A stretch of DNA of 63,253 nt, filler included, from Octopus bimaculoides (lineage: Eukaryota), in NCBI RefSeq assembly GCF_001194135.2. It is 5 parts of 5 records of this genome, joined end to end, with 100 filler letters (N's around TTAATTAATTAA, not from the genome) between each part and the next. Parts side by side here need not be neighbours in the genome. Positions count along the whole stretch, not along the records: positions 1 to 25,319 come from NC_068981.1; 4 more parts are not named here. One strand, 5' to 3'. Within the stretch, counting starts at the first letter, position 1. Each line of letters begins with the position of its first letter. The notes under the pieces were generated by a model. That model was given only the letters and a program-made list of their open reading frames with translations, did not search any database and was not told the origin of the DNA. Positions 3,287 to 25,319 of the stretch are shown here, piece after piece. The translations under genes and the position numbers were made by a program.

Positions 3287-3680
3287 ATGAAATATGTAAA
3301 AACACAAATGTGCTAAGGTTCACTATAGCTGTTTCAGATTTATTTTTATTATGAGCAACTCAATTACCTCATGAAAAACCAGGTAAATATAATTTTAAAT
3401 CTTAAATTTAACATTTAAAATTTAGCTCCTAGTGAATATATTTTTTGATTTTCTCATTTTGGTGATGATTAGAGAATGAATTTACAAATCAAAGCTAGAC
3501 CTTATATGGAATAAGGAATTATAAACCTGTCAACAAACTAGGTTATTGAAAAGCCATTAATAGGTGGTCAGAGGAACAGATATGAAATACACTAACATCA
3601 GTGCCATTTTCCAGACAAACCAGAGTCATTTAGTGATAACATACTTTCAGATACATATATAAACAATTCATATACACAAG
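3287..3680. repeat. ~395-bp segment with an inverted copy at 6532-6935
   Basis: Alignment by eye to the reverse complement of 6532-6935 gives roughly 90% identity with one ~10-bp indel. Confidence 0.9.
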
Positions 3681-3777: not shown

Positions 3778-6700
3778 ATCATCATCATCATCATCATCGT
3801 TTAATGTCCACTTTCCATGCTGGCATGGGTTGGATGGTTTGACTGACGACTGGCAAACCAGGAGGCTGTATCAGACTCCAATCTGATCAGGCAAGGTTTC
3901 TACAGCTGGATACCCTTCTTAATGCCAACCCCTCCAAGAGTGATTTTTATCTGCCATCGGCACAGGGCCAGTCAGGCAGCACTAGCATTGACCATGCTTA
4001 TATGGTGCTTTTTACATGCCACCAGCACAGGAGTCAGTCAGGCAGCACTTGCATTGACCATGCTTATATGGTGCTTTTTACATGCCACCAGCATGGGAGC
4101 CAGTTCAGTGGGACTGGCATCCACCACACTCGAGTGGTGTTTCTTATGTGCCACCAGCATGGGTGCCAGTCAGGTGGTACTGGCATCGGCCACAGCAATG
4201 ATTTCACTTGACTCAATAGGTCTTCTCAACATTACATTCTCTGCTGGATGTGTAATGTCAGTGTGCATACACATCCAGCAGAGCATACTAGCTTCATTTC
4301 TTGCAAGCTTACACATGTCCTCAGCAGTCACAGTCCATGTTTCACTGCCATGTAGTATGGCTGTTCACACATGTGTCATACAGTCTACCTTTTCCACTAA
4401 GCAAGAAACTCTTTGTTACCAGAAGAGGTAGGAGCTCTCTGAACTTTTCTCAGGCTATTCTTATTTTAGCAGCTATGCTATTAGAGCATCCATCCCCGCT
4501 ACTGACTTGGTTACCTAGGTAACGGAAGCTATCAACTACTTGTAGTTTTCCCACCTGGAATGTGATAGAAGCTGTTTTCTGCACATTTTCAGTGCTTATT
4601 ACCCCTGTGCATCTGTCACACATAAAAACTATCATCCCAGTTAACCTTCCTTTGATATTGCTGCATCTCTTATGTGTCCATAGCCTACACTGGGTACATC
4701 TTATGGAGTTCCTACTTATGCCTTTTTTACAGATCGAGCAGGGCCATCTACTTAAAGGGATTTGTGATTTGTCTGCCTTCCTACTTACTAAGACTTTGGT
4801 TTCTGCTAGGTTAACTTTAAGCCTATTGATTCTAGTCCTTGCTTCCACACCTGAAACTTCTCCTCTGACTCAGCTATTAGAGCAAGGTCATCAGCATAGA
4901 GAAGCTCCCAGGGGCACCCTGTCTTGAATTCCTCTGTTATTGCCTGAAGGACTATGATGAATAAGAGGGGGGCTGAGGACTGATCTTTGGTAGACACCTT
5001 CCCCTACCCGGAATTCTTCACTATACTTGTTGCCAACCCTCACCTTACTGACAGCATCCCTGTACATGGCTTGTACAGTTCTCACTAACCACTCATCAAT
5101 CCCTAGTTTCTGCATTGACCACCAGATGAGGGACCAGGGGACCCTATCAAAGGGTCAATGAAAGATGAAAGCCAAAGACAGGTATTTCTCCTGCAGCTGT
5201 TTTACCAGAAATATAGCATCAGTGGTGCTTCTTCCTGGAACACACCTAAACTGCATCTCATCTAAACTGACTCTCTCCCTGATTAGTTGGGCTATGACCC
5301 TCTCCATGACTTCCATCACCTGATCCAACAATTTGATACCTCTGTAATTATTCGTATCTAATGCCTCACCTTTACCTTTGTAGCAGTTGACTATGGTGCT
5401 GCTACACCAGTCATTGGGTATGACTCTTTCATGTATCACCTGACTGACTATATAGGTGACTAGATTATAGCCTACACCGCCAGATATTTTAAGCATCTTT
5501 GCAGCAATTCCTGATGGGCCAGGGGCTTTCCTTGTCTTCATACCCTTAATTGCTTTATCTGCCAAGGTACTGTCAATTCAGATTGCTGATCCTTCTCTTG
5601 GGTTGACATTTGGCAGACTCTCTTTCTTCCATTCAATCTCTTCATTTAGCAACCTCTCTCTCTTTGCAGCCTCATTAAATGCAAGTGAGCCATTATCCAT
5701 GACATCACGACTGTCTCACACACTGTCTTGCAACATGAAGCACTTCAAGTCTTTGGTTTACAAGATGCAGAACGTTGGTAAATATTTTCTTATCTGCTCT
5801 CCATTTTGCTAAGTAAACCTGCCTCCTAGCTTCCCTTCTGGCAATCTGTACAGTTCCCTGCTACCACCGTTCTTCCAGTCCTTCCATTCCTGTTTCTTTT
5901 CCCTAATGGCCCTGTCAACTACATTATTCCACCACCACATTACCTTAGGTTGAGAGGGGACTTTGCACCATCCACAAATCTGGTCAGGTTGTCTCATAGG
6001 AACCTCCAGTTGTCTTCCATATTATATATCCACCTCTTTTTCGTCAGAAGCTTCGAGTAACACATCTCTAAATCTCAGTCCATTCACAGGATCCTTAAGC
6101 TTCCAGACTTTTCTTTTCCATGCTGATCATCTAATGGGCATCCATTTAGCCCTGATCCTGAGGCCACTAACTACTAACCTGTGGGGTGCGTTTTTCACCT
6201 GAGAAGGTTTTGGTATTTATAGGTAACCATCTTTCCTGTTTCCTGGCAAGAATGTAGTCAATCTGACTAGTGTGTCCACCAGAACGGTAGGTGAATAGTC
6301 GACTTGCAGGTTTCTTGAAGTTAGTATTACAGACCATAAGATCATTTGCATCACAGAACTCCAGCAGCCTGATTCCTTCCTTATTGCAGGAACCAAATCC
6401 ATAGCCACCATGTACACCATGGAAGCTCCCTGCATGTTGTCCAACATGCCTGTTGAAGTCACCAGCCACAAAGAGAAGGTCCCTGTCATTCAACGATGAG
6501 GTAGTCTGCAAGAGGGTATCATAAAATGGGTCTTGTGTATGTGAATTGTTTATGTACGTATCTGAAAGTATGTTATCACTAAATGACTGTGGTTGGATTA
6601 TATTTATCTGGAAAATAGCACCGATGTTAGTGTATTTCATATCTGTTCCTCTGACCACTTATTAATGGCTTTTCAATAACCTAGTTTCTTGACAGGTTTA

Positions 6701-7560
6701 TAATTCATTATTCCATATAAAGTCTAGCTTTGATTTGTAAATTCATTCTCCAATTGTCACCAAGATGAGGGAATCAAAAAATATATTCACTATGAGCCAA
6801 ATTTTAAATGTTAAATTTAAGATTTAAATTTATATTTACTTGATTTTTCATGAGGTAATTAAGTTGCTCATAATGAAAATCAAATTGAAACAGCTATAGT
6901 GAACCGTAACACATTTGTGTTTTTACATATTTCATTAGGTAGCCCTGGCTGAGTGAATAGTTGCTAATCCATGTTTCTGCTTAAGTATTCTATCACAGAC
7001 TCTGGCTATTTCGATTACCTTATCAACCCATTTCTCTGCAAGAAGTATACTCATGTCCCCAACCCCATCAGTGTTCCTTACCCAGAAAATCTTATACCTA
7101 TGTTCTTCGCCTGTGAGGAACCTAGCAGAACTTCCTCTCCACCTTCTTAGATGCAGCACAATTCTATATGTCTCTGTTCAAGCATCTCAACAATCTCACC
7201 AGACCTACTTTTCAATGTGCCAACATTAAGTGTGCCAATTCCGAGGGTGTGGGCCAGTGAGACCCTGGGATGGGGGAAAACAGCATCATGTATCTGAAAA
7301 GAAAGGTCGCATTTGGCAGAACTCTTAAACATACAACAGCTTTCAACCTGCATACACTACATCATCATTTTATGTGCTACATAATCACTTCCTTCCATAG
7401 GAGATAAACACTAAGTAGGGACAGGGGAGTATTTAAACCATTGAAGCTGTTCAGGGGAAAGACATCAAATAAAAGTCAGGGGATAAAGACTTCCGGTTTA
7501 GGTAATGGGGTGGGATGGGCGATTATACCGCGAAACAGCAACACTCTGGCTGCTGGTGTG
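3778..7560 (-). mobile_element. Near full-length decayed RTE LINE (APE endonuclease + RT, (GAT)n tail)
   Basis: APE motifs GTLNVGTL..EIVEML and VAGDFN.HVG, SQIDYIL; RT motifs KAPGPSGI, NYRGIKLL, QF..VPGRSTTDAIF, LLYADDL. The 3' UTR has ~60-bp tandem units and a (GAT)n tail at 3778-3798. Many frameshifts. The 5' limit is approximate. Confidence 0.9.
6532..6935. repeat. ~400-bp insertion interrupting the RTE endonuclease; inverted copy of 3287-3680
   Basis: The LINE peptide is continuous across the block (..QPGLP(NE) | (K)DPFYDTLLQTT..). The block aligns in reverse to 3287-3680. Confidence 0.85.
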
Positions 7561-7711
7561 AAAGAATAATAATAATAATTAATTCGTTTTATTGGCCACA
7601 AGGGCTAATATNNNNNNNNNNNNNNNNNNNNNNNNNNNNNNNNNNNNNNNNNNNNNNNNNNNNNNNNNNNNNNNNNNNNNNNNNNNNNNNNNNNNNNNNN
7701 NNNNNNNNNNN

Positions 7712-10389: not shown

Positions 10390-11390
10390 TTTACATCTGG
10401 TAACTTCATAACTGGCTGGCACTGTCTGGAGACTGGTATTACTGCTGGCTGCTCAATATCTGTTATGTGGTTTACTCTGGTCATGGACATGATTTTGAAA
10501 GTGACAGAATTTTCAGAACAAATGGCCCATATGCATGATCATGCAGAATCCCCTGTCAAGGCTAGATGAGCAGATAAAGTGGTCAAAAATGTGGTTCAGA
10601 GCAAAGTCACACAATCTGACATTTATTAGGGGAGTGCAGAAAGAAGTGAAATTTAAAATAACAGAAAAGAGAGAACATCAACAAACAAGACTGGGGTGTG
10701 CATATGGTGGAACATTGTCAAACAGAAGTCACAGGATGCAGACTATGAAGCAAATCGATGATGAAATAAAAGTAATTGATGGTTCAAAGTTACCAAGAAA
10801 GTGTCTAAAATTTGGCTTACATCCACACTTTTTGTGGCCACTATTAGTATACGAGGTGGCACCATCACAGGTTCAAGTCATTGAGCAAAAGTGCCATATG
10901 TTTATTAGGAAATGGTTAGATATACCATGGATAATGAATAGCTTAGCTCTTTATTATAAAAGGAGCTCACTGCAATTACCACTGATACCAATTATCAAAA
11001 CTTTTAAAGCAGGGAAGATATGAACAGTGATGATGCTAAAAGAGTCGAAGGATATAGAAATCAGGAATAATTAACTAGACGTAAAAAAACAGCCAGGAAA
11101 GTAGAAGTAGAAACTGATGACATCCTGTCTTCACTTAAACACTGAAATATGATGGGTACCATGCAAATTGATCAAAAGAGACTTGGATTTGGCTCAGATC
11201 GGTTCAGATCACAAATATGAAGTAGAGCAATTGCAGACTTGTTAGTAACACTGTCAAGGCAAGGGAAGCAGAGAGAAAATGGCTCCATTTGATTTAATGT
11301 TTTCAGAAAGGAGGGCTGATAAGATGGGAGGAGCATATAACTAAGAGAAAAGTAAGCTGGAACGAAATATAGAAGTGGAGTACATCTCAA
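10390..11390 (+). mobile_element. Hero/NeSL-like (R2 superfamily) non-LTR retrotransposon fragment
   Basis: GWHCLETGITAGCSISVMWFTLVM and FGLHPHFLWPLLVYEV...FIRKWLDIP...LALY...LQLPL..IIKTFKAGK match motifs recalled for Hero-type RT and C-terminal regions. Confidence 0.7.
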
Positions 11391-11733
11391 CTAAGTTTTT
11401 TTCATTCATTCTTCTTATAATGACTTAACATTGCCAAAACCTTATATAAATGAAATACTGTCTGTCAGTTTTTTACTCACTTGAACAGTGTATATTTTAT
11501 AGCCAACTCTTATTCTGCTAGACTTTATCCTAATTAGGAAAATGGAGTTTAAGAATGTGACCAACCCAAACTATAATTCTGTGTATATCTATTCGATGCT
11601 TATTCTTGCATCTTATCACCCAGTCAATCAATCAATCAATTAATCAATCAATGTATGTACGTATGTGCATGCGTGTATGTATATGTATATATATGTCAGT
11701 AGGTATGTTTGTGTGTTGTATGTGTATATAAAG

Positions 11734-12129
11734 TTAAACTCCATAATATGTGTTCTTTTTGTTTTTTCTAAAGTGTCTTCTATGGGTTTTGTGATTTTTC
11801 TTATAATGTTTATGGTTTTTTTTAAAGACATGATGTTTGTGATGTGGTTTATGGTGAGCCTTGTGATGTGATTTATGATGAACTTTGTGATGTGGTTTAT
11901 GGTGAACTTTGTGATGTGATTTATGATGGGGTATGTGATGATGTTTATGATGATGCTCATGTTGGGAATTGTGATCAGGCTTATTTCCAGGCTGGTGGTA
12001 TGGTGTGTTGAAAGTTGTATATGTATGGCTTTCATTTTTGCCTTTGTCATGGTCATCAAAACTGTTGTCATGATAAAACCAGCATTCCTTCACTGAACCA
12101 TCAAACCGAAGAAACTGCATTTCGGTGTT
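11734..12129 (-). CDS. Probable terminal coding exon (131 aa) with a His/Lys-rich (HHKx)8 tail; host gene unidentified
   Basis: Strong acceptor (ttttgttttatttttccag|AAC) at 12130-12150. Open frame NTEMQFLRFDGSVKECWFYHD...HHKSHHKVHHKPHHKVHHKSHHKAHHKPHHKH...KNTYYGV to TAA at 11736-11734. His and Lys codons vary only synonymously across the repeats. Confidence 0.7.
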   Translation of the reverse strand, partial: NTEMQFLRFDGSVKECWFYHDNSFDDHDKGKNESHTYTTFNTPYHQPGNKPDHNSQHEHHHKHHHIPHHKSHHKVHHKPHHKVHHKSHHKAHHKPHHKHHVFKKNHKHYKKNHKTHRRHFRKNKKNTYYGV

Positions 12130-13919
12130 CTGGAAAAATAAAACAAAACAACAAAAAAAGAATGATTATGAAAAAATGTTATATATAACCGCAAAGAGGA
12201 TAATTATGATGATGCCAATGATAATGTTTCTATTAATCACAGTAGGCTTAAGTTATGGAAATGAACAAAAGTATGTTTTTAAACAAATAAAGTATTATTG
12301 ATAATTTTTTTTTCTTTCAATTTACCAAGTTATCCTACATCAAGTAGTTCCCAGCAGGGTAATAACACAACTAATTATCCAACTCAAGAGGCAACCTATG
12401 CTTCACAAAGCTTATCACTTCTTTAGGATCTCTTCTTTAAAATGGGCTCGTTTACCTGTAGCAATTTGATCAAAATTTAATTGCACATAGCACCAAACAT
12501 AGGATGTGTTTTAAATGAAGTTATTTTGTAAAATAATACTGATTTCTTTATAAAAAGGTTCACTCTGTATCAACAGTGGATTTTTTCTTCGGTATCTTTT
12601 TCATTTCTGTATGGAGTAATCCACAATATAAAAGCTTCATGCATTCTACATTGGCCATTGGTACCGATTTGTTGTTTAGTCAGAAGCTTTAATGCAGAAT
12701 CTGGATCTTTTCAGTTTGACTGCCAAAGTTTGAAAGTTCAAATTTATTGAAAATTTTAAAATTTACTCCATTAATGTAGTTTTCCAAGCTGAATCTCAGG
12801 AGATATTTCACTTTTTATTGAAAAATCTTATAAAAAGGTTAGAGGTTTAAAGTTTTATAATTTTCACCCACTTAGAAAACAGGATTTGGAAGCTCTCATT
12901 TTGTGTGTAAACAAATCAAATTCTACTTTATAACCCCTCATAACTTTTTTATTTTTTGGAATTTTCAGAGAATTTTTGAAAATTTTTATTCTACACAATT
13001 TATGTGATTATCCAAAAATAAAATAAAAAAATGTTTTGGTGTGTGATTTAAGGCCTATTTGACTTATTTTTAGCACATCAATGAGTGGAAATCATTTGTC
13101 AACATATGCTTTCTCACAGACAAAAGAGTTCTTATGCTTGGCTTTGCTACTATGGAGACAGGCATGAATGTGTCTATGGCTTATGATTGGCTGAAATAAC
13201 TCAAAATTTTGCAAACATTAAAAGCTAATAACTCTTAATTTATTGATTTATTGCGAAAATGAAAGCAGTGATTAGCATATAAAACTATATCATTGCACCG
13301 AATATGAAATCAATTCAAGCAAGAATTGAAGAGATTGAATATTGGCAACCAAAGAGAAAAGATCCCAGAACCCTTCTGAATCACTATTGCAATTTTTTAT
13401 ACTGTGATATTATGCACGTGCAATATTGATATTCTATTCACTCATTAGCCCTGACAGTTCATAACATCTACAATCAGCATTTTAGCATTTAAAATACTGA
13501 AATGTATATATATTGTGCTTTGGTTAGCAGGCCACAAATCTGGGCCATTGGTCAATTTCCATGATGATGGTTGCATCAGTTTTGTTGTCTGAAATGATTG
13601 CCATTTATTTTTTTACAAAATATGTCATTATATAGGAAAATACTCAAATATACATGCACATACACATATAGATACACAAAGATGGAGAACAAGACAGGCC
13701 CAAACAATGTTATGTGATGAATATCTCAATATTAGAAACAACTTTACCTTGATTCCACTTGTATTAGTAGTAACTGACCAGAAAAATAAGCAACAAAGTG
13801 AGATTTTAGATTGTAAAGTCTGTTGCAATTTACATTTTAATGATAAAATAATGGTATTGGCAATGTGTTTTTAAAACACAGTCACAAGGCCATTCATTCA
13901 CAGCTTGGGGTGAGATTTG

Positions 13920-14134
13920 ATGGCAAGCCAGTAGAATTGCTAGTGACCCAGACAACATGCTTTGCAGTATTTTGTCCATCCTTACAGTCTGAGTTCAAAT
14001 TCTGCAAAGGTTGATTTTGCTTTTCATTTTTAGGGTTGATAAAATAAATTCCAGTTGAGCACTGGGAACAATATAATCAACTAACTACCTCCCACCAAAT
14101 TTTAGGCCCTGTGCCTATAGTAGAAAGGATTATT
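13920..14134 (+). mobile_element. tRNA-derived SINE (family A), degenerate
   Basis: CTGAGTTCAAATTC B-box-like head and GACTTTGC.TTTCAT core shared with 14821, 27594 and 60818. Confidence 0.6.
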
Positions 14135-14289
14135 TTATTGACTCAGAAAGAATTAAAGACATGAGATATTGCAATGGATTTTTTGAAATTTTGTAAATTC
14201 TGTTTCCCAAACAAAAACAACAACAACAATAATAATGATGATGATGATGATGGTCTCTTCTGTTGAACATGAAATATGCACAAATGATT

Positions 14290-14477
14290 TCTGTATAGTA
14301 ATCAAATGCATGTGCTGTACATTAGCTCACTTCCACTTTCAAATAGATCTTGTCTGTACAGAGCAATGTGAAATGAAGTGGTTTGGTCAAGAATACAATG
14401 CATGGCTCAGTGCAGGAATTGAACCCACAATCTGTGATTGTTAGAGCAACACCCAAACCACTAGGCCACACATCTTC
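14290..14477 (-). mobile_element. tRNA-derived SINE (third family)
   Basis: Reverse strand has A-box (CCTAGTGGTTTGG) and B-box (GGTTCAATTCC) like motifs; related to 60605-60760. Confidence 0.5.
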
Positions 14478-14514
14478 ACAACAACAATAACAACAACAAC
14501 AACAAAAACAACAA

Positions 14515-15565
14515 TAATGTGGTGGCTCAGCAAGGGTGACCTAAAAAAGAAAACTGAAAGCCTAATCATCGCTGCCCAGAATCAGGCATTGAATACCAAC
14601 TCAGTGAAAAGGGATGTATAGCACACAAGTGCAATGAACCTTTGCAGAATGTGTGGGAAGAGGTTTGAAAGTGTGACTTACATTGTTAGTGCTTGTGAAA
14701 GTCATGTGCAGAAAGAGTACAAGCACAGACATGACAAGGTAGCCCAAAACCTTCACTGGCTACTATGTTGGAGGTATGGTTATGAGGTAACAGGTGCTTA
14801 GTACCAACATACACCAGAAAAGGCAGTGAGCTGGCAGAAACGTTAGCACGCCGGGCAAAATGCTTAGCAGTATTTCGTCTGCTGTTACGTTCTGAGTTCA
14901 AATTCTGCCAAGGTCGACTTTGCCTTTCATTCTTTCAGGGTCAATAAATTAAGTACCAGTTATGCACTGCAGTCAATGTAATCGACTTAATCCTTTTGTC
15001 TGTCCTTGTTTGTCCCCTCTATGTTTAGCCCCTTGTGAGCAATAAAAAAATAAGAAAAGGTAATGGATGTAAAGGGGAAGGCATAAATCGTCTGGGACTT
15101 CCAGACAGACAAGGTGTTAAAGCACTGAAGGCTGGACATAGTAACCTTTAGGAGGGACAAACAAACATGTTTAATAATCAACATGGCAATACCAGGAGAT
15201 CAATATATCATCATGAAAGAAAGAGAAAAGATTGATAAATATGGAGCCCTGAGAATTGAGATCGCCAAGATGTAGTGGTTATGAGTGTCAAACATGAAGG
15301 TTGTCCCTATTGTCATCAGAGCAGTGGGTTCAATACCACCCAACCTGAAGAAACATCTGGAAACTTTAGAAATACCCTACAATCTAGGTGCATTGCAAAA
15401 ATCGGCATTACTTGGAATTGCATGCATATTATGTAAAGTAGTCTGTCTGAGATCCTTGTTGTGACTTGACAAACAGTAAAAAACCCCAGTAGATACAATA
15501 TCTTCAATCAACAACATCACAATATTGGATACTGAGTGACATCTTAAATAATAATAATAACAATA
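14515..15565 (+). mobile_element. 5'-truncated R4/Dong-like LINE 3' fragment, interrupted by a SINE
   Basis: WWLSKGDLKKKTESLIIAAQNQALNTN, C-x2-C knuckle, RLE-like region, (AAT)n tail at ~15548-15570. Closely similar to 17520-18322. Confidence 0.8.
14821..15053 (+). mobile_element. tRNA-derived SINE (family A) inserted in the R4-like LINE
   Basis: GGCAGTGAGCTGGCAGAAACGTTAGC...GAGTTCAAATTC head. Flanked by the duplicated AGAAAAGG target sequence. Confidence 0.85.
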
Positions 15566-15571
15566 ATAATC

Positions 15572-18322
15572 ATTAGAATTTTTGAACCAGCTGGGTATAT
15601 TCCAGATTACTAAAAATGGGCTCATGAATCAAATAAGAATAATTTGGAATAGAGGCTTTCTTAATGAAGCTCAGATTCAGACAATCAGGAAAAATCTTCT
15701 GTAGTGGTAATAACTTTGAGGAGGATAATATTGGTGAAGATCAGTGAATGCATAGGCAAGGTGGAGTTGTAGTAGAGGAGAGGCCAGCCGATCAATATAA
15801 TGTGGAGAACCTTGTATTACAAGAGGATATGACTGAAGAACAGAGAAACCTCATGATAAGACTCAAGGACCTAATGGTTACAAGAACAGGGACCAATCTA
15901 GTGAATTTGAGAAGCTTCGACAGTAATGATGTGAAACACATGACCCAAAAAGTTGGTGAGGTTCTAAAAAACATTCTAACAAAAAATCTAATGGAAACAA
16001 GGGACTTGATTAGATCCACTTCAATTTTAGTAGATGAACTGGTTGGAAAGAAAGAGAGGGAAGCAGACAGAAGGAGCCATAGTGGAAGCAGAGAATTGAA
16101 GGCGATATTAAAACTTTGTATAAAGATCTAAGTTGCATAGAAAAATGGTCCAAAGGGCAGTGGGAAAATGCCAAAAAAAAAGGTGCAAGGGCATATCTTG
16201 AAATAGAAAAGAAAGGGTTCAAAACATGTGCAGGCGAAAACATTAAAGGTGCTACACTGATTGCATATTGCACTTCCAGCAAAACAGGTTATTCTCAAAT
16301 AACCAGAGGCAGTTTTTTTTTAAGAGCTTAGGAGGAGATACAGAAGATAATACACCTGAAGCAGAGTAAACCCACCAATTTTGGAATAACATTAGGGGGC
16401 AAGAAGTTTCCCCACAACCACAGTGCTGAGTGGATTTATTCCATGAGATCCGAACTCCATCACCCAGAAGTGCCATGTTCACATAACAACAGAAGATGTA
16501 ATTGCACAGGTATTAAAACTGCCAAACTTGAAAGCAGAAAGACCAGACAGAATTCAAGGTTACTAGCTCAAGTGGTTTAGGTCAATACGCAAGTGAATTG
16601 TGTTGCAATTAGACAATTGCCTACAGAATGGTACAGTTCCAGAATGGATTGTAGAGGCATAGACAACATTGTTGATGAAAGATCGGTCAAAGAGCAATGA
16701 GGTTGGCAATTACCAACCCATTGCTTGTCTTAACCTCTTATGGAAAGTGTTAACAGGCATCCTCACAGGTAAAATATATATGTTCCTTGCAGAAAACAAT
16801 TTACTTCCAGTATAACAAAAGGGATGCTGAAAAGGATCCAAGGGCACCGAGGATCACCTTGTGATAGACGAGGTTGTAATCAAGAACTGCAAACAGTACC
16901 AAATAACTTGTGCATGGCCTGGATAGACTTTAAAAAAGCTTATGACATCGCATTTGTGGATTCTAGAAACATTCAACATGTGTGGAATAGCTGGGAACGC
17001 ATGTGCACTGACTTAGAACAGATTACCTAGTTGGAAAACATGTATTTTCTGTAACAACCAGCTCTTAACCAAGGTAACAGTCAAAAGAAATATTTTCCAG
17101 GGAGATTTTTGTTCATCTTTGTTATTTGTTATAGCCTTGATCCCATTTTCTGTAGTCTTGTGCAAAGTCAACATGCACTGTGAGCTGAGAAAGAGTTAAT
17201 CTTGTCTCAACCACCTTTTCTTAATGGGTGATTTAAAATGTACACAGGCTGTACAAGAAGAGCTGTAAAAGTGGACATGGGCTGATTAGCATACAGGAGT
17301 GCATCAACAGTGAAAGAAGAAACATGACAGAATATTTAGTGAATAGCAAACAAGACCTTCTACAGCCAATGCAGAAGGATTTACCAAAAATGGACTTGAG
17401 AATGCTAATGAATTCCAATCACGAATAGCCAATGAAAGAGAAGAAACTCTACTCCATATGAAATTACCTGGTAAGTTCCACCGTAAAACTAACAACCTAA
17501 AAGAGCAGGAAGCATAATGGAGGTGGTTCAACAAGAGTGATCTAAAAAAGAAGACTGAAAGCTTAATCATTGCTGCCCAGAATCAGGCATTGAATACCAA
17601 CTCAGTGAAAAGGGATATATATCACACAAATGCAAATGAACCTCTGCAGAATGTGTGGGAAGAGGGTCGAAAACATGACTTACATTGTTAGTGCTTGTGA
17701 AAGTCTTGTACAGAAAGTGTACAAGGGCAGACATAACAAGATAGCCCAAAACCTTCACTGGCTACTATGCTAGAGTTATGAATATGAGGTAATGGATGCT
17801 TGGTACCAACATACACCTGAAAACATAATGGACATAAAGAGGAAGGCAAAAATCCTCTTGGACTTTGACTTCCAGACAGAAAAGGTGTTAGAGAACTGAA
17901 GGCTAGATATAGTAACCTTTAGGAAGGACAAACAAGCATGCCTAGTAATTGACATAGCAGTTCCAAGAGATTATTATGAAAGAAAAAGAAAAGATTGATA
18001 AATATGGAGATCTGAGAATTGAGATTGCCAAGATGTGGTAGCTACAGGAGTCAAACATAAAGATTGTCCCTGTTGTCATTAGAGCATTGGATTCAATACC
18101 ACCCAACCTGAAGAAACATCTAGAAACTTTAGAAAATCCTACAATCTAGGTGTATTGCAAAAATCGGTATTACTCGGAACTGCACACACATTGCATAAAG
18201 TGCTGTTTGTCTGAGATCCTTGATGTGACTTGGCAGACAGTACAAACCCCCAGTAAACACAATAGCTTCAATCAATATCAAAATACTGAATACTGTGAAA
18301 TGTCTTGATAATAATAATAATT
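15572..18322 (+). mobile_element. R4/Dong-like non-LTR retrotransposon (RT + restriction-like endonuclease), decayed with an internal deletion
   Basis: GNYQPIACLNLLWKVLTGIL, QKGC.KGSKGT.DHLVID, AWIDFKKAYD, GIFQGD, IIAAQNQAL, DF.FQTDKVLE..R.DIV, LVIDIAVP, K.DKYGDL.IEI, (AAT)n tail. Confidence 0.85.
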
Positions 18323-19454
18323 GTTTCTAATTTAGGCACAAGACCAGCAATGGAGTTATTTAATACCATTGACTTCAGTACTTAACTGGTGCCTCATTTT
18401 ATCAACCCTGAAATGATAAAAAACAAAACTGAGCTTGGTGGATTTTGAGCTCGCAAATACTGCTCTAACAATTCTGCTAGCATTTTCTAAAATAGTTTAC
18501 ATATTCTGGGAGAAGAAACACTTGATTGGATAAAGCCTACTATTTACCTGTTTCTTATTTTATTGACCTCAAGATTGACTAACAAGATTCGAACTCAGAA
18601 CTGACTGTCTCAAGACTGAGTTTCTATACCTCCCATTAAATTATAATAGTTTTTAATTTAAAGTCACTAGGTCAGCAATTCTGAGGGAATGGGGTTAGTT
18701 GTTTTATCAACTCCAGTACTTGATTGGTACAAACCCCTGGTAGACACAATATCTGGGTCATTAAAATAACCCCAAAAGATAAAAGGCATAGCTGACCTCA
18801 ATGGGATTTGAACTTACAAATGGAAGTATCATAACTAAATAGCACAAGGTATTTTGTCCAAGGCTCTAATGATTTTTGCCTATCCAATGACATAGAACAC
18901 ATGCAAAATGAAATTTAAAAAAAATCTTACACTAAAACTAACACTATTTACAAACAGATTAACCATACTCAACAAGAGCCTAACTAACTGGAATCTAACA
19001 GGTAGCTTTCTAAATAACTGAATTTCCATATCTGGATTTCCAGTTATGTCATTACATGACCCCTGTTTTTAAAATGGCATGAGCATTTACATTTTTCTAT
19101 GCACTATAAATATGTGATGTTGCAACAAATTAAAGCAATAAAATACTTTTCCGGGCGATGTATGTAAAAATTTTCCATGTGAGAATCCATTACAGCTTTG
19201 CTAAAATTGTTCTGATACCCTAGTTGACAACTTTTATTCATTTCCAAATGAGGTAATAATCCTCCAGTCTATTGAGCAAGAAACAACCAGCCATGCTCCA
19301 CCATTAAGTAGAGCAGTGTGAAACAATCCACACCATGTGGTAATGTATCAAAGAAGTGCAGGCTTTTTATACCTGATAGATCTCATAACCTGTTTAGATC
19401 TTAGAACTATACTGACCTACTGAACTCTAGATATGAAATTTCTATTTTATTTTC

Positions 19455-19596
19455 ACAGGCATTGCTGTGTGGTAAGAAGTTTGCTTTCCAATCACATAGT
19501 TCTGGGTTCAGTCACAATTTGTGGCACCTTTTACTATAGCCTCAGATCGACCAAAGCCTTGTGTGTGGACTTGGTAGATGGAAAGGGAAAGAAATT

Positions 19597-19600
<4 letters not shown>
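19455..19600 (+). mobile_element. tRNA-derived SINE head (family B)
   Basis: GCTGTGTGGTAAGAAG...GGGTTCAGTC...CCAAAGCCTTGTG.GTGGA followed by (AT)n. Confidence 0.7.
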
Positions 19601-19648
<48 letters not shown>

Positions 19649-20105
19649 NNNNNNNNNNNNNNNNNNNNNNNNNNNNNNNNNNNNNNNNNNNNNNNNNNNN
19701 NNNNNNNNNNNNNNNNNNNNNNNNNNNNNNNNNNNNNNNNNNNNNNNNNNNNNNNNNNNNNNNNNNNNNNNNNNNNNNNNNNNNNNNNNNNNNNNNNNNN
19801 NNNNNNNNNNNNNNNNNNNNNNNNNNNNNNNNNNNNNNNNNNNNNNNNNNNNNNNNNNNNNNNNNNNNNNNNNNNNNNNNNNNNNNNNNNNNNNNNNNNN
19901 NNNNNNNNNNNNNNNNNNNNNNNNNNNNNNNNNNNNNNNNNNNNNNNNNNNNNNNNNNNNNNNNNNNNNNNNNNNNNNNNNNNNNNNNNNNNNNNNNNNN
20001 NNNNNNNNNNNNNNNNNNNNNNNNNNNNNNNNNNNNNNNNNNNNNNNNNNNNNNNNNNNNNNNNNNNNNNNNNNNNNNNNNNNNNNNNNNNNNNNNNNNN
20101 NNNNN

Positions 20106-20285
20106 GTGGCACGTAAAAGCACCCACTACACTCTCAGAGTGGTTGGCGTTAGGAAGGGCATCCAGCTGTAGAAACTCTGCCAAATCAGATTGGAGCCTGG
20201 TGTAGCCATCCGGTTTCACCAGTCCTCAGTCAAATCGTCCAACCCATGCTAGCATGGAAAGCGGACGTTAAACGATGATGATGAT
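20106..20285 (+). mobile_element. RTE LINE 3'-UTR fragment with (GAT)n tail
   Basis: Reverse complement of the 3' end seen at 3778-3935; CCCATGCTAGCATGGAAAGCGGACGTTAAACGATGATG. Confidence 0.8.
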
Positions 20286-20295
20286 ATATATATAT

Positions 20296-22990
20296 CATCA
20301 TCATCAACATTGAAACATCCGTTGTCCATGCTAGCATTGGGTTGGACAGTTTGACCAGGGCTGGTAAGCTGAGGGGCTGCACCAGACTTCAGTCTGATTT
20401 AGTATGGTTTCTACAGCTGGATGCCCTTCCTAACGCCAACCACTCTGAGAATGTAATGGGTGCTTTTACGTGCCACTGGCATGAGTGTCAATTGCATGAC
20501 ACCGGTATCTGACATGACTACAATTTCACTTGGCTTGATGGGTCTTCTTCTCAAACACAGCATATTGCTAAAGGTTTTGATCATTTGCCATTGCCTCCAT
20601 GAGGCCCAGCACTAGAAAAGTGCTTTTTACATTCCACCAGCATAGGTGCTAGTTATGTGACACTGGCATCAGTCACATTGCCTTTACAAGTCCCAATGCT
20701 TGAAAGGTGCTTTTTACAAGCCACCAACATGAGTACCAGTTACATGACACTGACAACAGCCACTATTTCACTTGACAAGTCTTCTCAAGCACAGCATATC
20801 ACCAAAGGTCTCAATTACTAGTCATTGCCTCTGTGAGGCCTTACATTCAAAGATCATGCGTCACCATCTCGTCCCACGTCTTCCCCAGTCTCCCTCTTCC
20901 ACTGGCAGAGATTGGCACTTCTTCACGCAGTTGTTCACATCCATATACATTCCATGACCATACCAACACAGTTGTCTCTCTTGCATACCACATCTGATGC
21001 CTCTTATGCCCAACTTTTCTCTCAAGACGTTTACATGCTGTTGTACATGCAAACTGACATTGGACATCAAACAAAGCACACTAGCTTCATTTCTTTCAAG
21101 CCTATGTATGTCCTTGGCAGTCACAGCCCATGTTTCACTACTGTGTAGCATGGCTGTTCACACACAGGCATCATACAATCTACCTTTCACTCTGTGCGGG
21201 AGGCCCTTTGTTACCAACAGAAGTAGGAGCTCTCTGAACTTTGACCAACATATTCTTATTCTACTGACTTGGTCACCTAGGTAATGAAAGTTATCACCAA
21301 ACTAGAAAGTTTCCCCTCTGACATTTGATGGACCCTATTTTCTGTACATTTTTAGTGTTAATTGTATCTGTGCATCTGCCACACACAAAAACTAGTTTCC
21401 TTGTTAACCTTCCTATGATATAGCTTACACTGGGTACATCTGATGGAATTTCTATCTACACTTTTCCTACAGATTGAGCAGGGCCATCTGCCTGAAGGGA
21501 TTTGTGATTTGTCTGCTTTCCTACTGACTAAGACTTTGGTTTTTGCTAGGTTAATTCTAAGGCTCTTCGATTCTAGACCTTGCTTCTACACCTGAAACTT
21601 CTTCTCTAGTTCTGGTAGTGATTCAGCTATAAGAACAAGTTCAACAGCATAAGTCATTTTAAATTTCTTTGTTATTACCTGGAGGACTATGATGATCAAG
21701 AGGGGGCCGAGGACCAATCCTTGGTGAACCCCTACTTGTACCCTGAATTTTTCACTGTACTTGATGCCAACCCTCACCTTACTGACAGCATCCTTGTACA
21801 TAGCTTGTACAGCTCTCACCAATCTCTATTTCTATTTTCCTCACTGACCACCAGATAAGGGATCAGGGTACTCTGTCGAAGGCTCTCTCCATGTCAACAA
21901 AAGCCAGGTACAGAGGTTTGTCTTTGGCTAGGTATTTCTCCTGCAGTTGCCTTATCAGAAATATAGCATCAGTGATGTTTCTCCCTGGCACAAAACCAAA
22001 CTGTGTCTCATCTAGACTAACTCTCTCCCTAATTAGTTGGGCTATGACTCTCTCCATGACCTTCATCGCCTGACCCAACAATTTAATGCCTCTGTAATTA
22101 TTTTTATCTAAAGCACCATTTTTACCTTTGTGACTATGGTGCTGCTACACCAGTTATTGGGTATCACTCTTTCATGTACCACCTGGTTAACTATGTAGGT
22201 GATTAGACCATAACCTACATCACTGGATATTTTAAGCATCGCAGCAGTGATTCCTGACAGGCTGGGGACTTTTCCTGTCTTCATGTCCTTAATTGCTTTA
22301 TCTACCAAAGTACTGTTGATTCAGATGGTTGGGCCCTCAGTTGGGTCAACATTTGGTAGACTCTTCTTCTCCCATTCATTCTCTTCATTTAACAGTCTTT
22401 TGTAATGGTGTCTTCAAGCCTCTTTCTTTGCAGAATCATTAAATGCAAGTGAATCATCAGCTATGAAAACATATTTCTCTCTTAACATCACAATTTTCTC
22501 CCACACGCTGTCTTGCAATCCTAAACACTTCAAGTTTCAGGTCCTCTTGTCACAGAACATTGGTAAACTACTTATATACCTGCCTCCTAGCTCCCCTTCT
22601 GGCTGTCTGATACAATTCCTTGCTACTACCACACTTCCAGGCTAGTTTCTTTGCCATTAGGCCTTGTCTACAGCATCATTCCACCACCACATCACCCTTG
22701 GTCTGGATAGGACTTTACACTGTCTGCAGATTTGGTCTGTGGTACTCAGCAAGCTGTCTCATTGGAATTCCCAGTTGACCTCTATGTTACAAGTCTGTAG
22801 TTCCTCCTCCTTTTCATCAAATTTCTCAACTAGGGTGTCCCTAAATCTCTGATTATACAGAGGATCCTGAAGCTGCTAAATCCTTCTTTTTCAGATTGGC
22901 CTTCTTATTGGCACCCTTCTGGCCTGAAGTCTAAAGTCACTAATGACTAGTCTATGCTGGTGGGTACATTTACACAGTCTCAGCCAGCCT
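20296..22990 (-). mobile_element. 5'-truncated RTE LINE, same family as 3778-7560
   Basis: QFGFVPGRNITDAIFLIRQLQEKYLAK..LAFVDMERAFDRVP, VGVHQGLVLGPLL, MLHSSETWAVT; (GAT)n tail at 20296. Confidence 0.9.
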
Positions 22991-23019
22991 CTCCATTTCA
23001 GGCTCTGTTTTGTGAAGAG

Positions 23020-23049
<30 letters not shown>

Positions 23050-23052
<3 letters not shown>

Positions 23053-24050
23053 ACTACTACCAATGGTACAGTCTACTTTGTTTGATTTGATGTTATGGGA
23101 AGCTACATTATAATAGTTATGATTTTTATTTTTACTTTTACTTTCCCTATTCTGAAGTTTAGGACCTCTTTTACAGTCATTTTTACTATTGCACCTACTT
23201 GTATTTTGTATGCATTTATATTTTTGTTCCTACAACTCTATATATGATCTCTAATTTTACTAGACATGGGGAAATAGCTAATGGTTTGTTTAAATCCCAC
23301 TTTTATTAAGGCTTTGTTGTAATGCTGAGTGTAGGTGTCAAAGATATTTTCATTAGCAGGGAAGTGTAATATTCTATTTGAGACACCGTTTATTAATGAG
23401 TTGATTACACCTGTAGGATGATTTGAAATGTGATGTACACAAGTTGTAGTCTCAACTGGTTTATAATATGGGTAAAATAGTCTTGATTTGAGGTCCAAAG
23501 TTACATCGAAAAAGTTCACAACCTTTAGGTTGTATTCAAAGATAATGTCTAGACTATAGTTTTTAAAGAATTTTTTCAGCTTTTTTCTCTCAGTGTATAT
23601 CTTACTGTTACTAGGGATAATAAACAAAGTGTCATCCCAACACAGACCTTCCAAATTTGGAAATAATTCTTGCAGTATTACAGTATTACAAATAGATACC
23701 ACAGAGATCAGTGACATGGACAGAATCATTTGATCCTACTGTGATATCAAAATTGTTTGGTCTATCTTTTGTAGTCCCTAATTTTCCTCAAACTCTACAA
23801 TAGTACATCTAGCATGTAGAATAATATTTAGCAAAAATTAAAGCTTCATCGAGTAGAGGTGAAATACTAGGGTAATAAGTAATGTCAAATTGAAGGAAAG
23901 AGTACCTACTTTTGTTCTATGTATTTCAGAACAAGTGTATGAGGGTGAGTAAGAAAGTTTGTAGACCGACTATGAAGGAGTGATACTAGAGCTGTGAAAT
24001 ATTGCATGCATTAATTCCAACCCTTCATATTAATAACTGCATTGTTTCTG
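23050..24050 (-). mobile_element. Penelope-like element RT fragment
   Basis: WDDTLFI, KVVNFFDVTLDL...YPYYKP...VHHISNHP..VINSLINGVSNRI...ENIF....HYNKAL are Penelope RT C-terminal motifs. Confidence 0.8.
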
Positions 24051-24059
24051 TACAGGTAA

Positions 24060-24350
24060 ACTGACATTGGACTGTTCAAAGTAGACTTCAAATGTAACTA
24101 GTTATTACTTCTCTTGAAAATGGACAAAATTTGACATCATGGTGTTATCAAGTACTTGCAGAGAAAGGGTTTAGTCCCCAAGGACATTCATGCTGACATG
24201 GTTGCTATATTAGGGGATGATGTTCCAGCTTTGTTGACGGTGCAAAAGTGAACAGCTGAATTTAGAAGGGGAAGGGAGAGTCTTGAAGATGACCTAACAT
24301 CTGGACATCCTACAACCACCACCACCGAGGAAAATATTGATAAAATGAAA
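24060..24350 (+). mobile_element. Mariner transposase N-terminal (HTH) fragment
   Basis: MDKI*HHGVIKYLQRKGL.PKDIHADMV..LGDD.P...TVQK*.AEFRRGRESLEDD..SGHP.T.TTEENIDK. Confidence 0.85.
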
Positions 24351-24998
24351 GCAAGCATTAGAACATGAAGTATTAAACAAAATGAAAGGTGCATTAGAAT
24401 TAATACACACACAAAGAGGGTGAGTGTCAAAGAATATGGTAAATATATAGAGAGAGATAGTTTGATGGTGATAGATACAGAGTGGGTGAGTTGTCGATCT
24501 AAAAGTTGAGTTGTTTCTCACAGCAAATTATATTTTTTTATTATTATTTATGATCAACTATGTCTGTGGGATGCAAAATTTGAAAATCAAATTCATTTTT
24601 CTTGAGGTTGCTCTGTTTGAAAGCCTTTTTGGGTTAAGCACACATACATAACCATATACACTCGCATTTATATAATAGAAGATATATATATATATATATT
24701 CGTTCAGGCACAGCAGTACTGATAACCAGTTGTTAGAACTCAATATACTCATCAGTCTATCTATCTACATAAGCTGATATTTTGTTAGAGGTTTTGAATT
24801 CATATATAGCTGTTTAAATGTGTATTAATATATATTTGCATGTATTTCTATATGTATATGAATAGTTATATTTATGTTCATTATATGCCTATGTGAATGC
24901 ATATGTTTATCTAAATCTGCATATTTCTGGGATGGGACCCTCACCTTCAAACTGTATTGTATTTGTTATGAGTATATATATATGTGTATATATATATA

Positions 24999-25319
24999 TC
25001 ATCATCATCGTTTAACGTTCGCCTTCCATGCTAGCATGGGTTGGACGATTTGACTGAGGACTGGTGAAACCGGATGGCAACACCAGGCTCCAATCTAATT
25101 TGGCAGAGTTTCTACAGCTGGATGCCCTTCCTAACGCCAACCACTCAGAGAGTGTAGTGGGTGCCTTTACGTGTCACCCGCACGAAAACGGCCACGCTCG
25201 AAATGGTGTCTTTTATGTGCCACCCGCACAAGAGCCAGTCCAGGGGCACTGGCAACGATCTCGCTCGAAAAACCTCATGTGTCACTCGCACATGAGCCAG
25301 TCCACGGGCACTGGCAACG
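24999..25319 (-). mobile_element. RTE-related 3'-end repeat (SINE-like or truncated LINE)
   Basis: Same (CAT)n-GTTTAACGT..CCATGCTAGCATGGG start as 3778 and 20296; near-identical in reverse to 56438-56764. Confidence 0.8.

What the first reader, a model, noticed from the sequence alone, without database searches (positions are those of the whole stretch)
11734..12129. His/Lys-rich (HHKx)8 terminal exon under apparent protein-level constraint
Seen: a strong acceptor, a 131-aa open frame and a stop. The eight HHKx units at 11928-11833 read cat-cat-aaa, cat-cac-aaa, cac-cat-aaa, cat-cac-aaa, cat-cat-aaa, cat-cac-aag, cac-cat-aaa, cat-cac-aaa. Every change in HHK is synonymous and only x varies (S,V,P,V,S,A,P,H), with a higher-order 48-nt period. 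A neutral minisatellite would not be expected to confine changes to third positions. The tail ends in a strongly basic stretch (KKNHKHYKKNHKTHRRHFRKNKK) after an acidic one. Known: His-rich proteins serve in metal binding, cephalopod beak sclerotisation/coacervation and antimicrobial peptides. Inference: this is the C-terminus of an unidentified protein with a pH-switchable Zn/Cu- or polyanion-binding tail. The unique part NTEMQFLRFDGSVKECWFYHD did not match any family I can name.
Basis: partly seen in the sequence, partly recalled or inferred. Interest (0 to 1): 0.75.

Follow-up and report, generated by a model that had tools for sequence, protein, structure and literature searches.

The report
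Octopus metalloproteinase's His/Lys-rich last exon
The flagged stretch is the already-annotated last coding exon of an Octopus bimaculoides matrix metalloproteinase gene; it adds a probably disordered histidine/lysine-rich tail that has diverged from the O. vulgaris copy as fast as the surrounding non-coding DNA, so it is an unusual but lightly constrained appendage.

Summary
On the minus strand, 11734-12129 is a 131-codon open frame behind a strong acceptor. It holds eight CAY-CAY-AAR-NNN units with 12/24/48-nt periodicity.

The protein is not unidentified. The exon is 100% identical to the C-terminal 131 residues of two predicted O. bimaculoides matrixins, XP_014785209.1 and XP_014785210.1. 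It begins one residue after the closing cysteine of the hemopexin domain, so it is a post-hemopexin extension. Related MMPs carry a stalk plus a hydrophobic GPI-type signal at this position. AlphaFold gives it pLDDT 31-38 and no secondary structure.

Evidence for constraint is weak:
- Within the array, the all-synonymous pattern gives P of about 0.01, or 0.03 once the adjacent HHIP unit is counted.
- Against the syntenic O. vulgaris locus, the exon is 91.6% identical and the flanking non-coding DNA 91.8%.
- Observed substitutions match the neutral expectation (30 versus 29.7), and the synonymous share is not significantly raised.
- Repeat number differs between the species.
- The O. vulgaris copy has a frameshift before the basic tail, plus a nonsense codon and a second frameshift in the preceding exon.

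A metal- or polyanion-binding role is untested. This is a lineage-specific variant of a known family, of low to moderate interest.

The parts
11734..12129 (-). Terminal coding exon (131 codons plus TAA) of an O. bimaculoides matrixin gene. It corresponds to residues 485-615 of XP_014785210.1 and 537-667 of XP_014785209.1.
   Evidence: 100% identity, with the match starting exactly at 12129; it begins one residue after the conserved terminal Cys of the hemopexin domain.
12130..12160 (-). 3' splice site: a polypyrimidine tract ending in CAG.
   Evidence: direct reading; the CAG and a shorter T-run are kept in O. vulgaris, which has a 20-nt deletion in the tract; both species' gene models use this site.
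11954..12129 (-). Unique, net-acidic part of the exon (NTEMQFLRFDGSVKECWFYHD...NSQ, pI 5.6).
   Evidence: no Pfam or PDB match; 89.1% identical to O. vulgaris, below the adjacent intron at 94.2%; pLDDT below 50.
11833..11953 (-). Coding minisatellite with 12-nt units (HHKx) and 24/48-nt higher order. There are 8 perfect units plus the degenerate HHKH and HHIP units at the 5' edge.
   Evidence: O. vulgaris has 24 nt (two units) and 9 nt fewer, both in frame.
11737..11832 (-). Polybasic end (HHVFKKNHKHYKKNHKTHRRHFRKNKKNTYYGV), including a 21-nt KKNHKxx duplication.
   Evidence: out of frame in O. vulgaris.
11816..11823 (-). A8 run where the O. vulgaris orthologue carries a 1-nt deletion plus two substitutions. 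This shifts the basic tail into another frame.
11624..11723 (-). Microsatellites, (ACAT)n-like and (TGAT)n, immediately 3' of the stop codon, in the presumed 3' UTR.
12161..25319 (-). At least 13 kb of the last intron, filled with decayed retroelement copies. No further exon of the gene lies in the window.
   Evidence: tblastn finds only the last exon. RVT_1 fragments; the gene spans about 134 kb.

Best explanation
The region is the genuine, already-annotated last coding exon of a lineage-specific Octopus matrix metalloproteinase. Isoform X1 of that protein has a signal peptide, a PG-binding-like prodomain with an RCGVFD cysteine switch, a catalytic domain with HELGHSFGLGHS and a Met-turn, and a divergent four-bladed hemopexin domain.

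The exon starts one residue after the closing cysteine of the hemopexin domain. It therefore encodes only a C-terminal appendage of 131 residues. The appendage has a short acidic unique segment, a His/Lys-rich array built by in-frame 12/24/48-nt tandem duplication, and a polybasic end.

In related MMPs (the MMP-17/25 type and molluscan relatives) this position holds a stalk plus a hydrophobic GPI-anchor signal. The octopus tail has no hydrophobic end.

Inferred, not shown: if the tail does anything, it acts as a disordered polycationic tether whose charge rises sharply as histidines protonate. Such a tether would hold the secreted protease on anionic matrix or cell surfaces, possibly helped by Zn2+ or Cu2+.

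Shown: the tail is under little or no detectable purifying selection between O. bimaculoides and O. vulgaris, and the O. vulgaris copy is disabled.
For: Identity of the exon:
- The exhaustive HMMER search found only two proteins. One is P0001, 100% identical over query 1-131, matching its residues 485-615.
- P0001 is XP_014785210.1, 'matrix metalloproteinase-20 isoform X2' of O. bimaculoides. Its cluster mate P0052 is XP_014785209.1 / A0A0L8G0Y3 and has the same C-terminus.
- Only this exon lies in the window.

Family:
- Peptidase_M10 at E=2e-49 and PG_binding_1.
- The AlphaFold model has a confident beta-rich domain at residues 276-483. Foldseek matches full-length proMMP-1, MMP-13 and MMP-12, and hemopexin-like domains with target-normalised TM-scores of 0.70-0.77.
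- C276 and C483 fall in the conserved hemopexin Cys columns.

Nature of the tail:
- pLDDT 31-38 with no secondary structure.
- GRAVY -2.07, 35 His, 22 Lys, calculated charge +17 at pH 7.4 and +43 at pH 5.5.
- Relatives carry 45-78-residue extensions ending in hydrophobic stretches. Pristionchus zmp-1-like tails also contain His runs.

Evolution:
- The syntenic O. vulgaris locus aligns over 4.4 kb.
- Coding identity is 91.6% and non-coding identity 91.8%.
- There are 30 substitutions against 29.7 expected from the flank substitution spectrum.
- The synonymous share is 5/15 to 10/30 against 0.236 expected (P = 0.27 and 0.15).
- In-frame indels of +9, -9 and -24 nt, plus a -1 frameshift.
- The O. 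vulgaris penultimate exon has a TAA nonsense codon and a 1-nt deletion.
Against: - No RNA-seq or proteomic evidence could be consulted, so use of the exon rests on gene models. These comprise one identical O. bimaculoides protein, recorded under both RefSeq and UniProt accessions, plus the O. vulgaris model that uses the same acceptor.
- There are hints of constraint. Within the array, all HHK changes are synonymous (P about 0.01). The KKNHK duplicate differs by three synonymous transitions.
- The repeat block is 96.6% identical between the species, with 3 differences against 7.4 expected (P=0.06).
- The Nei-Gojobori dN/dS point estimate is 0.38.
- With 30 substitutions, and one lineage probably a pseudogene, moderate constraint in O. 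bimaculoides cannot be excluded.
- The tethering mechanism is inferred from composition and position only.
Confidence: 0.7

Rival explanations
1. One reading: the His/Lys tail is a functional module maintained by selection. It would be a pH-switchable Zn/Cu- or polyanion-binding domain, with purifying selection on the His-His-Lys triplets and a free fourth position.
For: -: positions 1, 2, 4, 5, 7 and 8 are invariant in the eight units, and only synonymous transitions occur in HHK. This gives P of about 0.009 for 3 events and 0.03 once HHIP is counted.
- the KKNHK 21-nt pair shows the same third-position pattern.
- the repeat block has fewer interspecies differences than expected (3 versus 7.4). 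All three lie in one x codon.
- the calculated charge switches strongly with pH.
- His runs also occur in nematode MMP stalks.
Against: -: overall divergence and the synonymous fraction match the neutral expectation.
- unit number differs between the species (8 versus 6).
- the basic end is frameshifted in O. vulgaris.
- the O. vulgaris gene carries further disabling lesions.
- no relative of the tail was found in either protein library beyond the two Octopus proteins.
- A 12-nt unit preserves the frame automatically, so in-frame copy-number change is not evidence of selection.
- The statistical pattern was chosen after seeing the data.
Confidence: 0.2
2. Annotation artefact: the open frame is a by-product of A/C/T-rich low-complexity DNA. 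Gene predictors attached it because the penultimate exon needs a stop. The real transcript would end elsewhere, for example by reading into the intron, which gives a stop after 8 codons in the O. vulgaris sequence.
For: -: many open frames of similar length occur in the window.
- two frames of the same strand are open here.
- the exon evolves at the neutral rate.
- in O. vulgaris, reading past the GTAAGT donor gives CNVSSVFA*.
- No transcript evidence was accessible.
Against: -: only 0.45% of local dinucleotide shuffles reach 143 open codons.
- the acceptor is strong; it is conserved.
- the identical O. bimaculoides model is recorded under both RefSeq and UniProt accessions, and the O. vulgaris model uses the same acceptor in the same phase.
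- the third-position pattern within the repeats fits a translated history.
Confidence: 0.1
3. The whole gene is a decaying paralogue, a pseudogene in O. vulgaris and non-functional or nearly so in O. bimaculoides. In that case the tail has no function at all.
For: -: the last two exons of the O. vulgaris copy carry three disabling lesions.
- no orthologue from any other species was found among 5.8 billion protein clusters.
- the hemopexin domain is too divergent for Pfam.
- isoform X2 lacks the zinc-binding helix.
Against: -: isoform X1 keeps an uninterrupted 667-codon frame spread over about 134 kb, with signal peptide, cysteine switch, HExxHxxGxxH and Met-turn all intact.
- the hemopexin region still folds confidently.
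Confidence: 0.15

Closest known systems
GPI-anchored membrane-type MMPs (vertebrate MMP-17/MMP-25 type) and molluscan relatives (Haliotis 'MMP-16-like' P0008, Gigantopelta 'stromelysin-3-like' P0005)
   Same: They share the prodomain, catalytic and hemopexin architecture and are among the best sequence hits. They also carry an extra C-terminal segment after the closing hemopexin cysteine, encoded at the 3' end.
   Different: Their extension is 45-78 residues and ends in a hydrophobic GPI-signal-like stretch. The octopus extension is 132 residues, extremely hydrophilic (GRAVY -2.07), and ends in a polybasic run with no hydrophobic segment. There is no detectable sequence similarity in the extension.
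Nematode zmp-1-type MMPs (Pristionchus P0044, P0045, P0051)
   Same: Their post-hemopexin stalk contains short His runs, such as SHHHHHRALR and HHYHDHNH. This suggests His-rich stalks can arise repeatedly in this family.
   Different: The His runs are short and not tandem HHKx units, and the tail still ends in a hydrophobic signal. They are not homologous to the octopus tail.
Histidine-rich region of vertebrate histidine-rich glycoprotein (tandem GHHPH-type repeats; from my own knowledge)
   Same: It is a tandem short His-rich repeat in a secreted protein. Its charge and its Zn2+- and heparan-sulfate-binding depend on pH.
   Different: There is no sequence relationship (no hits). The repeat unit and the host protein differ. 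Binding has been demonstrated for HRG and is untested here.
Cephalopod His-rich structural proteins (squid beak HBPs, suckerins; from my own knowledge)
   Same: They are histidine-rich and occur in cephalopods.
   Different: Those proteins are Gly/Ala/Tyr-rich modular structural proteins. This tail has almost no Gly or Ala, is Lys-rich, and is attached to a protease. No homology was found.

Membership tests
Matrixin / MMP (MEROPS M10A) | Peptidase_M10 catalytic domain | tested here: met
   PF00413 at E=2.1e-49 over residues 127-284 of P0052. Foldseek matches MMP catalytic domains.
Matrixin / MMP (MEROPS M10A) | HExxHxxGxxH zinc-binding motif and Met-turn | tested here: met
   HELGHSFGLGHS ... 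AIMWP is present in isoform X1 (P0052). That exon is absent from isoform X2 (P0001).
Matrixin / MMP (MEROPS M10A) | Cysteine-switch motif PRCGxPD in the prodomain | tested here: met
   the variant KRCGVFD is present. R99 and C100 fall in nearly invariant columns.
Matrixin / MMP (MEROPS M10A) | Four-bladed hemopexin-like domain closed by a Cys-Cys pair | tested here: met
   Pfam PF00045 is not detected. However, the model has a confident beta-rich domain at residues 276-483. Foldseek matches hemopexin-like domains (1hxn 0.70, 7u68 0.77, target-normalised TM-scores) and full-length proMMP-1. C276 and C483 fall in the conserved Cys columns.
Matrixin / MMP (MEROPS M10A) | The window's open frame is part of that gene's coding sequence | tested here: met
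   131/131 identical to the C-terminus, with the exon boundary at 12129. Transcript evidence could not be consulted.
GPI-anchored MT-MMP (MMP-17/25 type) | C-terminal hydrophobic GPI-attachment signal after a stalk | tested here: not met
   the extension is present but has no hydrophobic stretch. It ends ...RRHFRKNKKNTYYGV.
GPI-anchored MT-MMP (MMP-17/25 type) | Furin-type RX[K/R]R site between the prodomain and the catalytic domain | tested here: inconclusive
   RISKR|F has K-R at P2-P1 but Ile rather than Arg at P4.
His-rich metal/polyanion-binding domain (HRG-type) | Tandem His-rich repeats in a secreted protein | tested here: met
   composition only, with 25 His in 46 residues. The protein has an N-terminal signal-like helix.
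His-rich metal/polyanion-binding domain (HRG-type) | Demonstrated Zn2+/Cu2+/heparin binding with pH dependence | not testable with these tools
   This needs the recombinant peptide and ITC or heparin chromatography.
His-rich metal/polyanion-binding domain (HRG-type) | Conservation of the repeat region across species | tested here: inconclusive
   the repeat block is 96.6% identical (P=0.06 against neutral). But unit number differs, the downstream tail is frameshifted, and the only comparison species carries a disabled gene.
Cephalopod beak/sucker His-rich structural proteins | Gly/Ala/Tyr-rich repeat modules and homology to HBPs or suckerins | tested here: not met
   the tail has only 4 Gly and 1 Ala; the exhaustive search found only the two Octopus proteins.

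The most novel reading that the evidence does not exclude
An octopus-lineage MMP has replaced the ancestral GPI-anchor signal of MT-MMP-like relatives with a self-expanding His/Lys coding minisatellite. This would work as a pH- and metal-gated electrostatic anchor, switching a secreted protease between matrix- or cell-bound and free states. A weaker add-on to this idea is that the first 25 residues of the exon (EMQF...ECWFYHD) are a relic of a fifth hemopexin blade.
Probability: 0.1. Interest if true: 0.5.

Novelty: new variant of a known kind. Interest (0 to 1): 0.25.

Why it matters
If the tail is functional, it would be a new way of localising a metalloproteinase: charge- or metal-switched tethering in place of a GPI or transmembrane anchor.

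If it is not functional, which the neutral-rate divergence and the broken O. vulgaris copy favour, it is a clear example of a coding minisatellite growing on the free C-terminus of a fast-evolving, lineage-restricted paralogue. It also shows that 'only synonymous changes between repeat units' can mislead when few events are involved and imperfect units are left out.

Finally, it flags O. vulgaris CAI9715303.1 as a chimeric gene model built over a probable MMP pseudogene.

Tried and rejected
- The word-index protein search with the 131 residues found nothing. It missed even the identical RefSeq protein, so that negative result was uninformative. The exhaustive search resolved it.
- Exact look-ups of the Met-started 128-residue ORF found nothing.
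- Pfam and PDB sequence searches of the tail found nothing. The best Pfam result was Presenilin at E=5.7, which is noise.
- The O. bimaculoides gene DNA could not be fetched. The gene range is about 134 kb, and the isoform X2 protein is not on record. This ruled out dN/dS for the penultimate exon and any check of upstream exons.
- tblastn found no further MMP exons in the 40 kb upstream of the O. vulgaris penultimate exon.
- Hemopexin-blade relic idea: BLASTP aligned NNTEMQFLRFDGSVKECWFYHDNSFD to two hemopexin blades of P0005, but at E=0.12 and 5.9. There was nothing against P0008. The profile-profile comparison gave E=0.42 with probability 0.1%. The idea is not supported.
- Dispersed minisatellite family: rejected, because the motif is unique to this site in both loci.
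- ncRNA or tRNA in the window: none found.
- Literature: no paper cites the accessions or describes a His-rich octopus MMP.
- A search with the hemopexin-plus-tail region returned only the same two Octopus proteins.

Full report
**1. The observation**

Read on the minus strand, a pyrimidine-rich tract (ttctttttttgttgttttgttttatttttccag) ends at 12130. It is followed by an open frame of 131 codons (12129-11737) and a TAA at 11736-11734. TRF reports periods of 12, 24 and 48 at 11836-11953. The motif CAYCAYAARNNNCAYCAYAAR occurs only here in the window, where shuffles expect none.

Two qualifications apply.
- Open-frame length is not remarkable in this window. Ten N-free stop-to-stop frames of at least 127 codons exist, and a second frame of the same strand is open for 149 codons over the same DNA. 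Even so, only 0.45% of local dinucleotide shuffles reach 143 codons.
- TRF's array has 9.8 units. The two 5' units read HHKH and HHIP, and HHIP has AAA>ATA, a replacement. 'Every change in HHK is synonymous' is therefore partly a result of counting only perfect units.

**2. What it is**

A first word-indexed search found nothing. The exhaustive HMMER search of 1.84 billion representatives found exactly two proteins.
- P0001 (615 aa) is 100% identical over all 131 residues, matching its residues 485-615.
- P0002 (250 aa) is 75% identical.

P0001 is XP_014785210.1, 'matrix metalloproteinase-20 isoform X2 [Octopus bimaculoides]'. Its cluster mate P0052 is XP_014785209.1, also UniProt A0A0L8G0Y3, 'interstitial collagenase isoform X1', 667 aa, with the same C-terminus. 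The window is therefore almost certainly O. bimaculoides.

tblastn places only this last exon in the window, and the match starts exactly at 12129. The gene spans about 134 kb. The 13 kb upstream is intron, full of decayed retroelements.

Isoform X1 has the defining matrixin features:
- Peptidase_M10 at E=2e-49 and PG_binding_1.
- A KRCGVFD cysteine switch, HELGHSFGLGHS and an AIMWP Met-turn.
- A hemopexin domain that Pfam does not recognise. An AlphaFold model built on 31 homologues gives a confident beta-rich domain at residues 276-483.
- Foldseek matches to full-length proMMP-1, MMP-13 and MMP-12, and to hemopexin-like domains with target-normalised TM-scores of 0.70-0.77.

In the family alignment, C276 and C483 of P0001 occupy the two conserved hemopexin cysteine columns. 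The exon junction lies after N484. The flagged exon therefore encodes nothing of the canonical fold. It is a 131-residue post-hemopexin extension.

**3. Anatomy of the extension**

The extension has three parts:
- A 55-residue net-acidic unique part (pI 5.6).
- A 46-residue His/Lys array (25 His, 9 Lys).
- A 30-residue polybasic end.

Overall it has GRAVY -2.07, 35 His, and a calculated charge of +17 at pH 7.4 and +43 at pH 5.5. AlphaFold gives pLDDT 31-38 and no secondary structure. The alignment has no depth in this region, so this is weak evidence for disorder.

The relatives are informative. MMP-17/25-like vertebrate proteins and the molluscan hits P0005 and P0008 carry 45-78 residues after the closing cysteine, ending in a hydrophobic GPI-signal-like stretch. 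Pristionchus zmp-1-like proteins even have short His runs in that stalk. The octopus tail has no hydrophobic end.

**4. Is it constrained?**

The O. vulgaris protein P0002 (CAI9715303.1, 'hypothetical predicted protein') led to a 70-kb syntenic locus, L001. This locus aligns with the window over 4.4 kb around the exon.

Identity in aligned columns is as follows.

| Region | Identity to O. vulgaris |
|---|---|
| Whole coding part of the exon | 91.6% |
| All flanking non-coding DNA | 91.8% |
| Unique N-terminal part | 89.1% |
| Adjacent 500 nt of intron | 94.2% |
| Repeat block | 96.6% |
| Basic end | 91.6% |

Using the substitution spectrum of the flanks (ts/tv 1.86), 29.7 substitutions are expected in the aligned coding columns and 30 are observed. 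The expected synonymous share is 0.236. The observed share is 5 of 15 single-change codons (P=0.27), or about 10 of 30 by path averaging (P=0.15). The Nei-Gojobori dN/dS is 0.38, but that method ignores the transition bias. pN (0.069) is close to the non-coding divergence (0.082).

The indels are +9, -9 and -24 nt, all in frame. The 12-nt unit makes in-frame change automatic for the repeat. There is also a 1-nt deletion with two neighbouring substitutions at the A8 run (11816-11823). This puts the whole basic end in another frame in O. vulgaris.

The O. vulgaris penultimate exon also carries a GAA>TAA nonsense codon and a second 1-nt deletion. P0002 is a chimeric model that skips that exon. 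The O. vulgaris copy therefore looks like a pseudogene, unless these are errors or polymorphisms of that one assembly.

Some evidence points the other way.
- Within the array, neutral substitutions in an HHK nonamer would be synonymous only about 21% of the time. Three to five independent synonymous-only events give P of 0.009 to 0.0004, or 0.03-0.008 once HHIP is included.
- The 21-nt KKNHKxx pair differs by three synonymous transitions.
- The repeat block has 3 interspecies differences against 7.4 expected (P=0.06).

My reading is that strong constraint is excluded. Weak or past constraint on the His/Lys array is possible but not demonstrated. One of the two lineages compared is probably non-functional, which limits the power of the test.

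**5. Distribution**

No other species' protein matched the tail or the divergent hemopexin half. This holds for the 1.84 billion representatives and for the 5.8 billion clusters. The nearest full-length relative is 44% identical over the N-terminal third only (P0003). The C-terminal half of this gene is lineage-restricted and fast-evolving.

**6. Mechanism**

Shown: the exon is a C-terminal appendage of an MMP, placed where relatives carry membrane-anchoring signals. It is hydrophilic, polycationic and built by tandem duplication.

Inferred: if functional, it acts as a disordered electrostatic tether to anionic matrix or membranes. Its charge would rise about 2.5-fold between pH 7.4 and 5.5, possibly with Zn2+ or Cu2+ bridging, as is known for the His-rich region of histidine-rich glycoprotein (my own knowledge). 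I put this at about 0.2-0.3.

The more likely state is a tolerated low-complexity extension of little functional weight.

The rivals are an annotation artefact (about 0.1) and a gene decaying in both species (about 0.15). These overlap with the main reading and are not exclusive of one another.

**7. Comparison and novelty**

The gene passes the tests made here for the matrixin family. It fails the defining GPI-signal test for MMP-17/25-type enzymes. The tail has no homology to HRG, beak proteins, suckerins or antimicrobial peptides.

The exon is already in public annotation, but the tail has not been described in the searchable literature. I class it as a new variant of a known kind, with low to moderate interest.

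**8. Dead ends**

The unique segment aligns weakly to hemopexin blades (E=0.12), but the profile comparison does not support this. No ncRNA or tRNA was found. The O. bimaculoides upstream exons could not be fetched.

Noticed in passing
L001:10001-59840 (O. vulgaris OX597814.1): The O. vulgaris gene model CAI9715303.1 (P0002) appears chimeric. An unrelated 121-residue first exon is spliced 46 kb downstream to the MMP terminal exon, skipping the penultimate MMP exon. The model reads the tail in a shifted frame and then splices out again just before the ancestral stop.
   Followed up: partly
L001:40504-40769: The O. vulgaris penultimate MMP exon carries a TAA where O. bimaculoides has Glu (IIA*GRLY) and a 1-nt deletion in ...CCTTCAAAGTAACA.... 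This suggests the orthologue is a pseudogene in that assembly.
   Followed up: partly
window 11640-12089 (-): A second frame of the same strand is open for 149 codons across the same DNA (MTTVLMTMTK...INHITKF...). After its frameshift, the O. vulgaris model actually reads part of this frame (LINIIRKIAKPIEDTLEK).
   Followed up: partly
window 4270-6660 and 20860-23000: Two decayed copies of one retroelement bearing a reverse transcriptase lie in direct orientation. They are 82-85% identical in the matching blocks. RVT_1 fragments lie on the minus strand at 21589-22081.
   Followed up: partly
window 3287-3619 and 6603-6935: 333-nt inverted arms, 92% complementary, bracket a 3-kb stretch that contains the first retroelement copy. 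The element type was not determined.
   Followed up: no
window 14633-15372 and 17635-18135: Two copies of another repeat, 87-88% identical and about 3 kb apart, lie inside the intron. Related pieces occur several times in the O. vulgaris locus.
   Followed up: no
window 3940-4194, 20615-20781, 20106-20295 / 24988-25177: 66-nt and 87-nt tandem repeats share a GTGCTTTTTACA(T/A)GCCACCAGCA core. A 190-nt inverted pair, 96% complementary, carries a recurring pseudo-ORF (KPDGYTRLQSDLAEFLQLDALPNANHSESVVGAFTCH). This is probably a dispersed octopus repeat family.
   Followed up: no
window 1038-1667, 7612-7711, 19649-20105: Three assembly gaps (runs of N) are each flanked by AT/AC dinucleotide repeats. 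The long 'ORFs' listed there are artefacts of the Ns.
   Followed up: yes
window 10535-11023 (+) and 23238-23729 (-): Two ORFs of 162 and 163 residues have no Pfam family. They are probably transposon-derived. The first lies about 0.7 kb beyond the MMP stop codon, on the opposite strand.
   Followed up: partly
P0001 versus P0052 (outside the window): Isoform X2 of the O. bimaculoides MMP skips the 52 residues carrying HELGHSFGLGHS and the Met-turn. If it is real, it would be a catalytically dead form that still carries the His/Lys tail.
   Followed up: no
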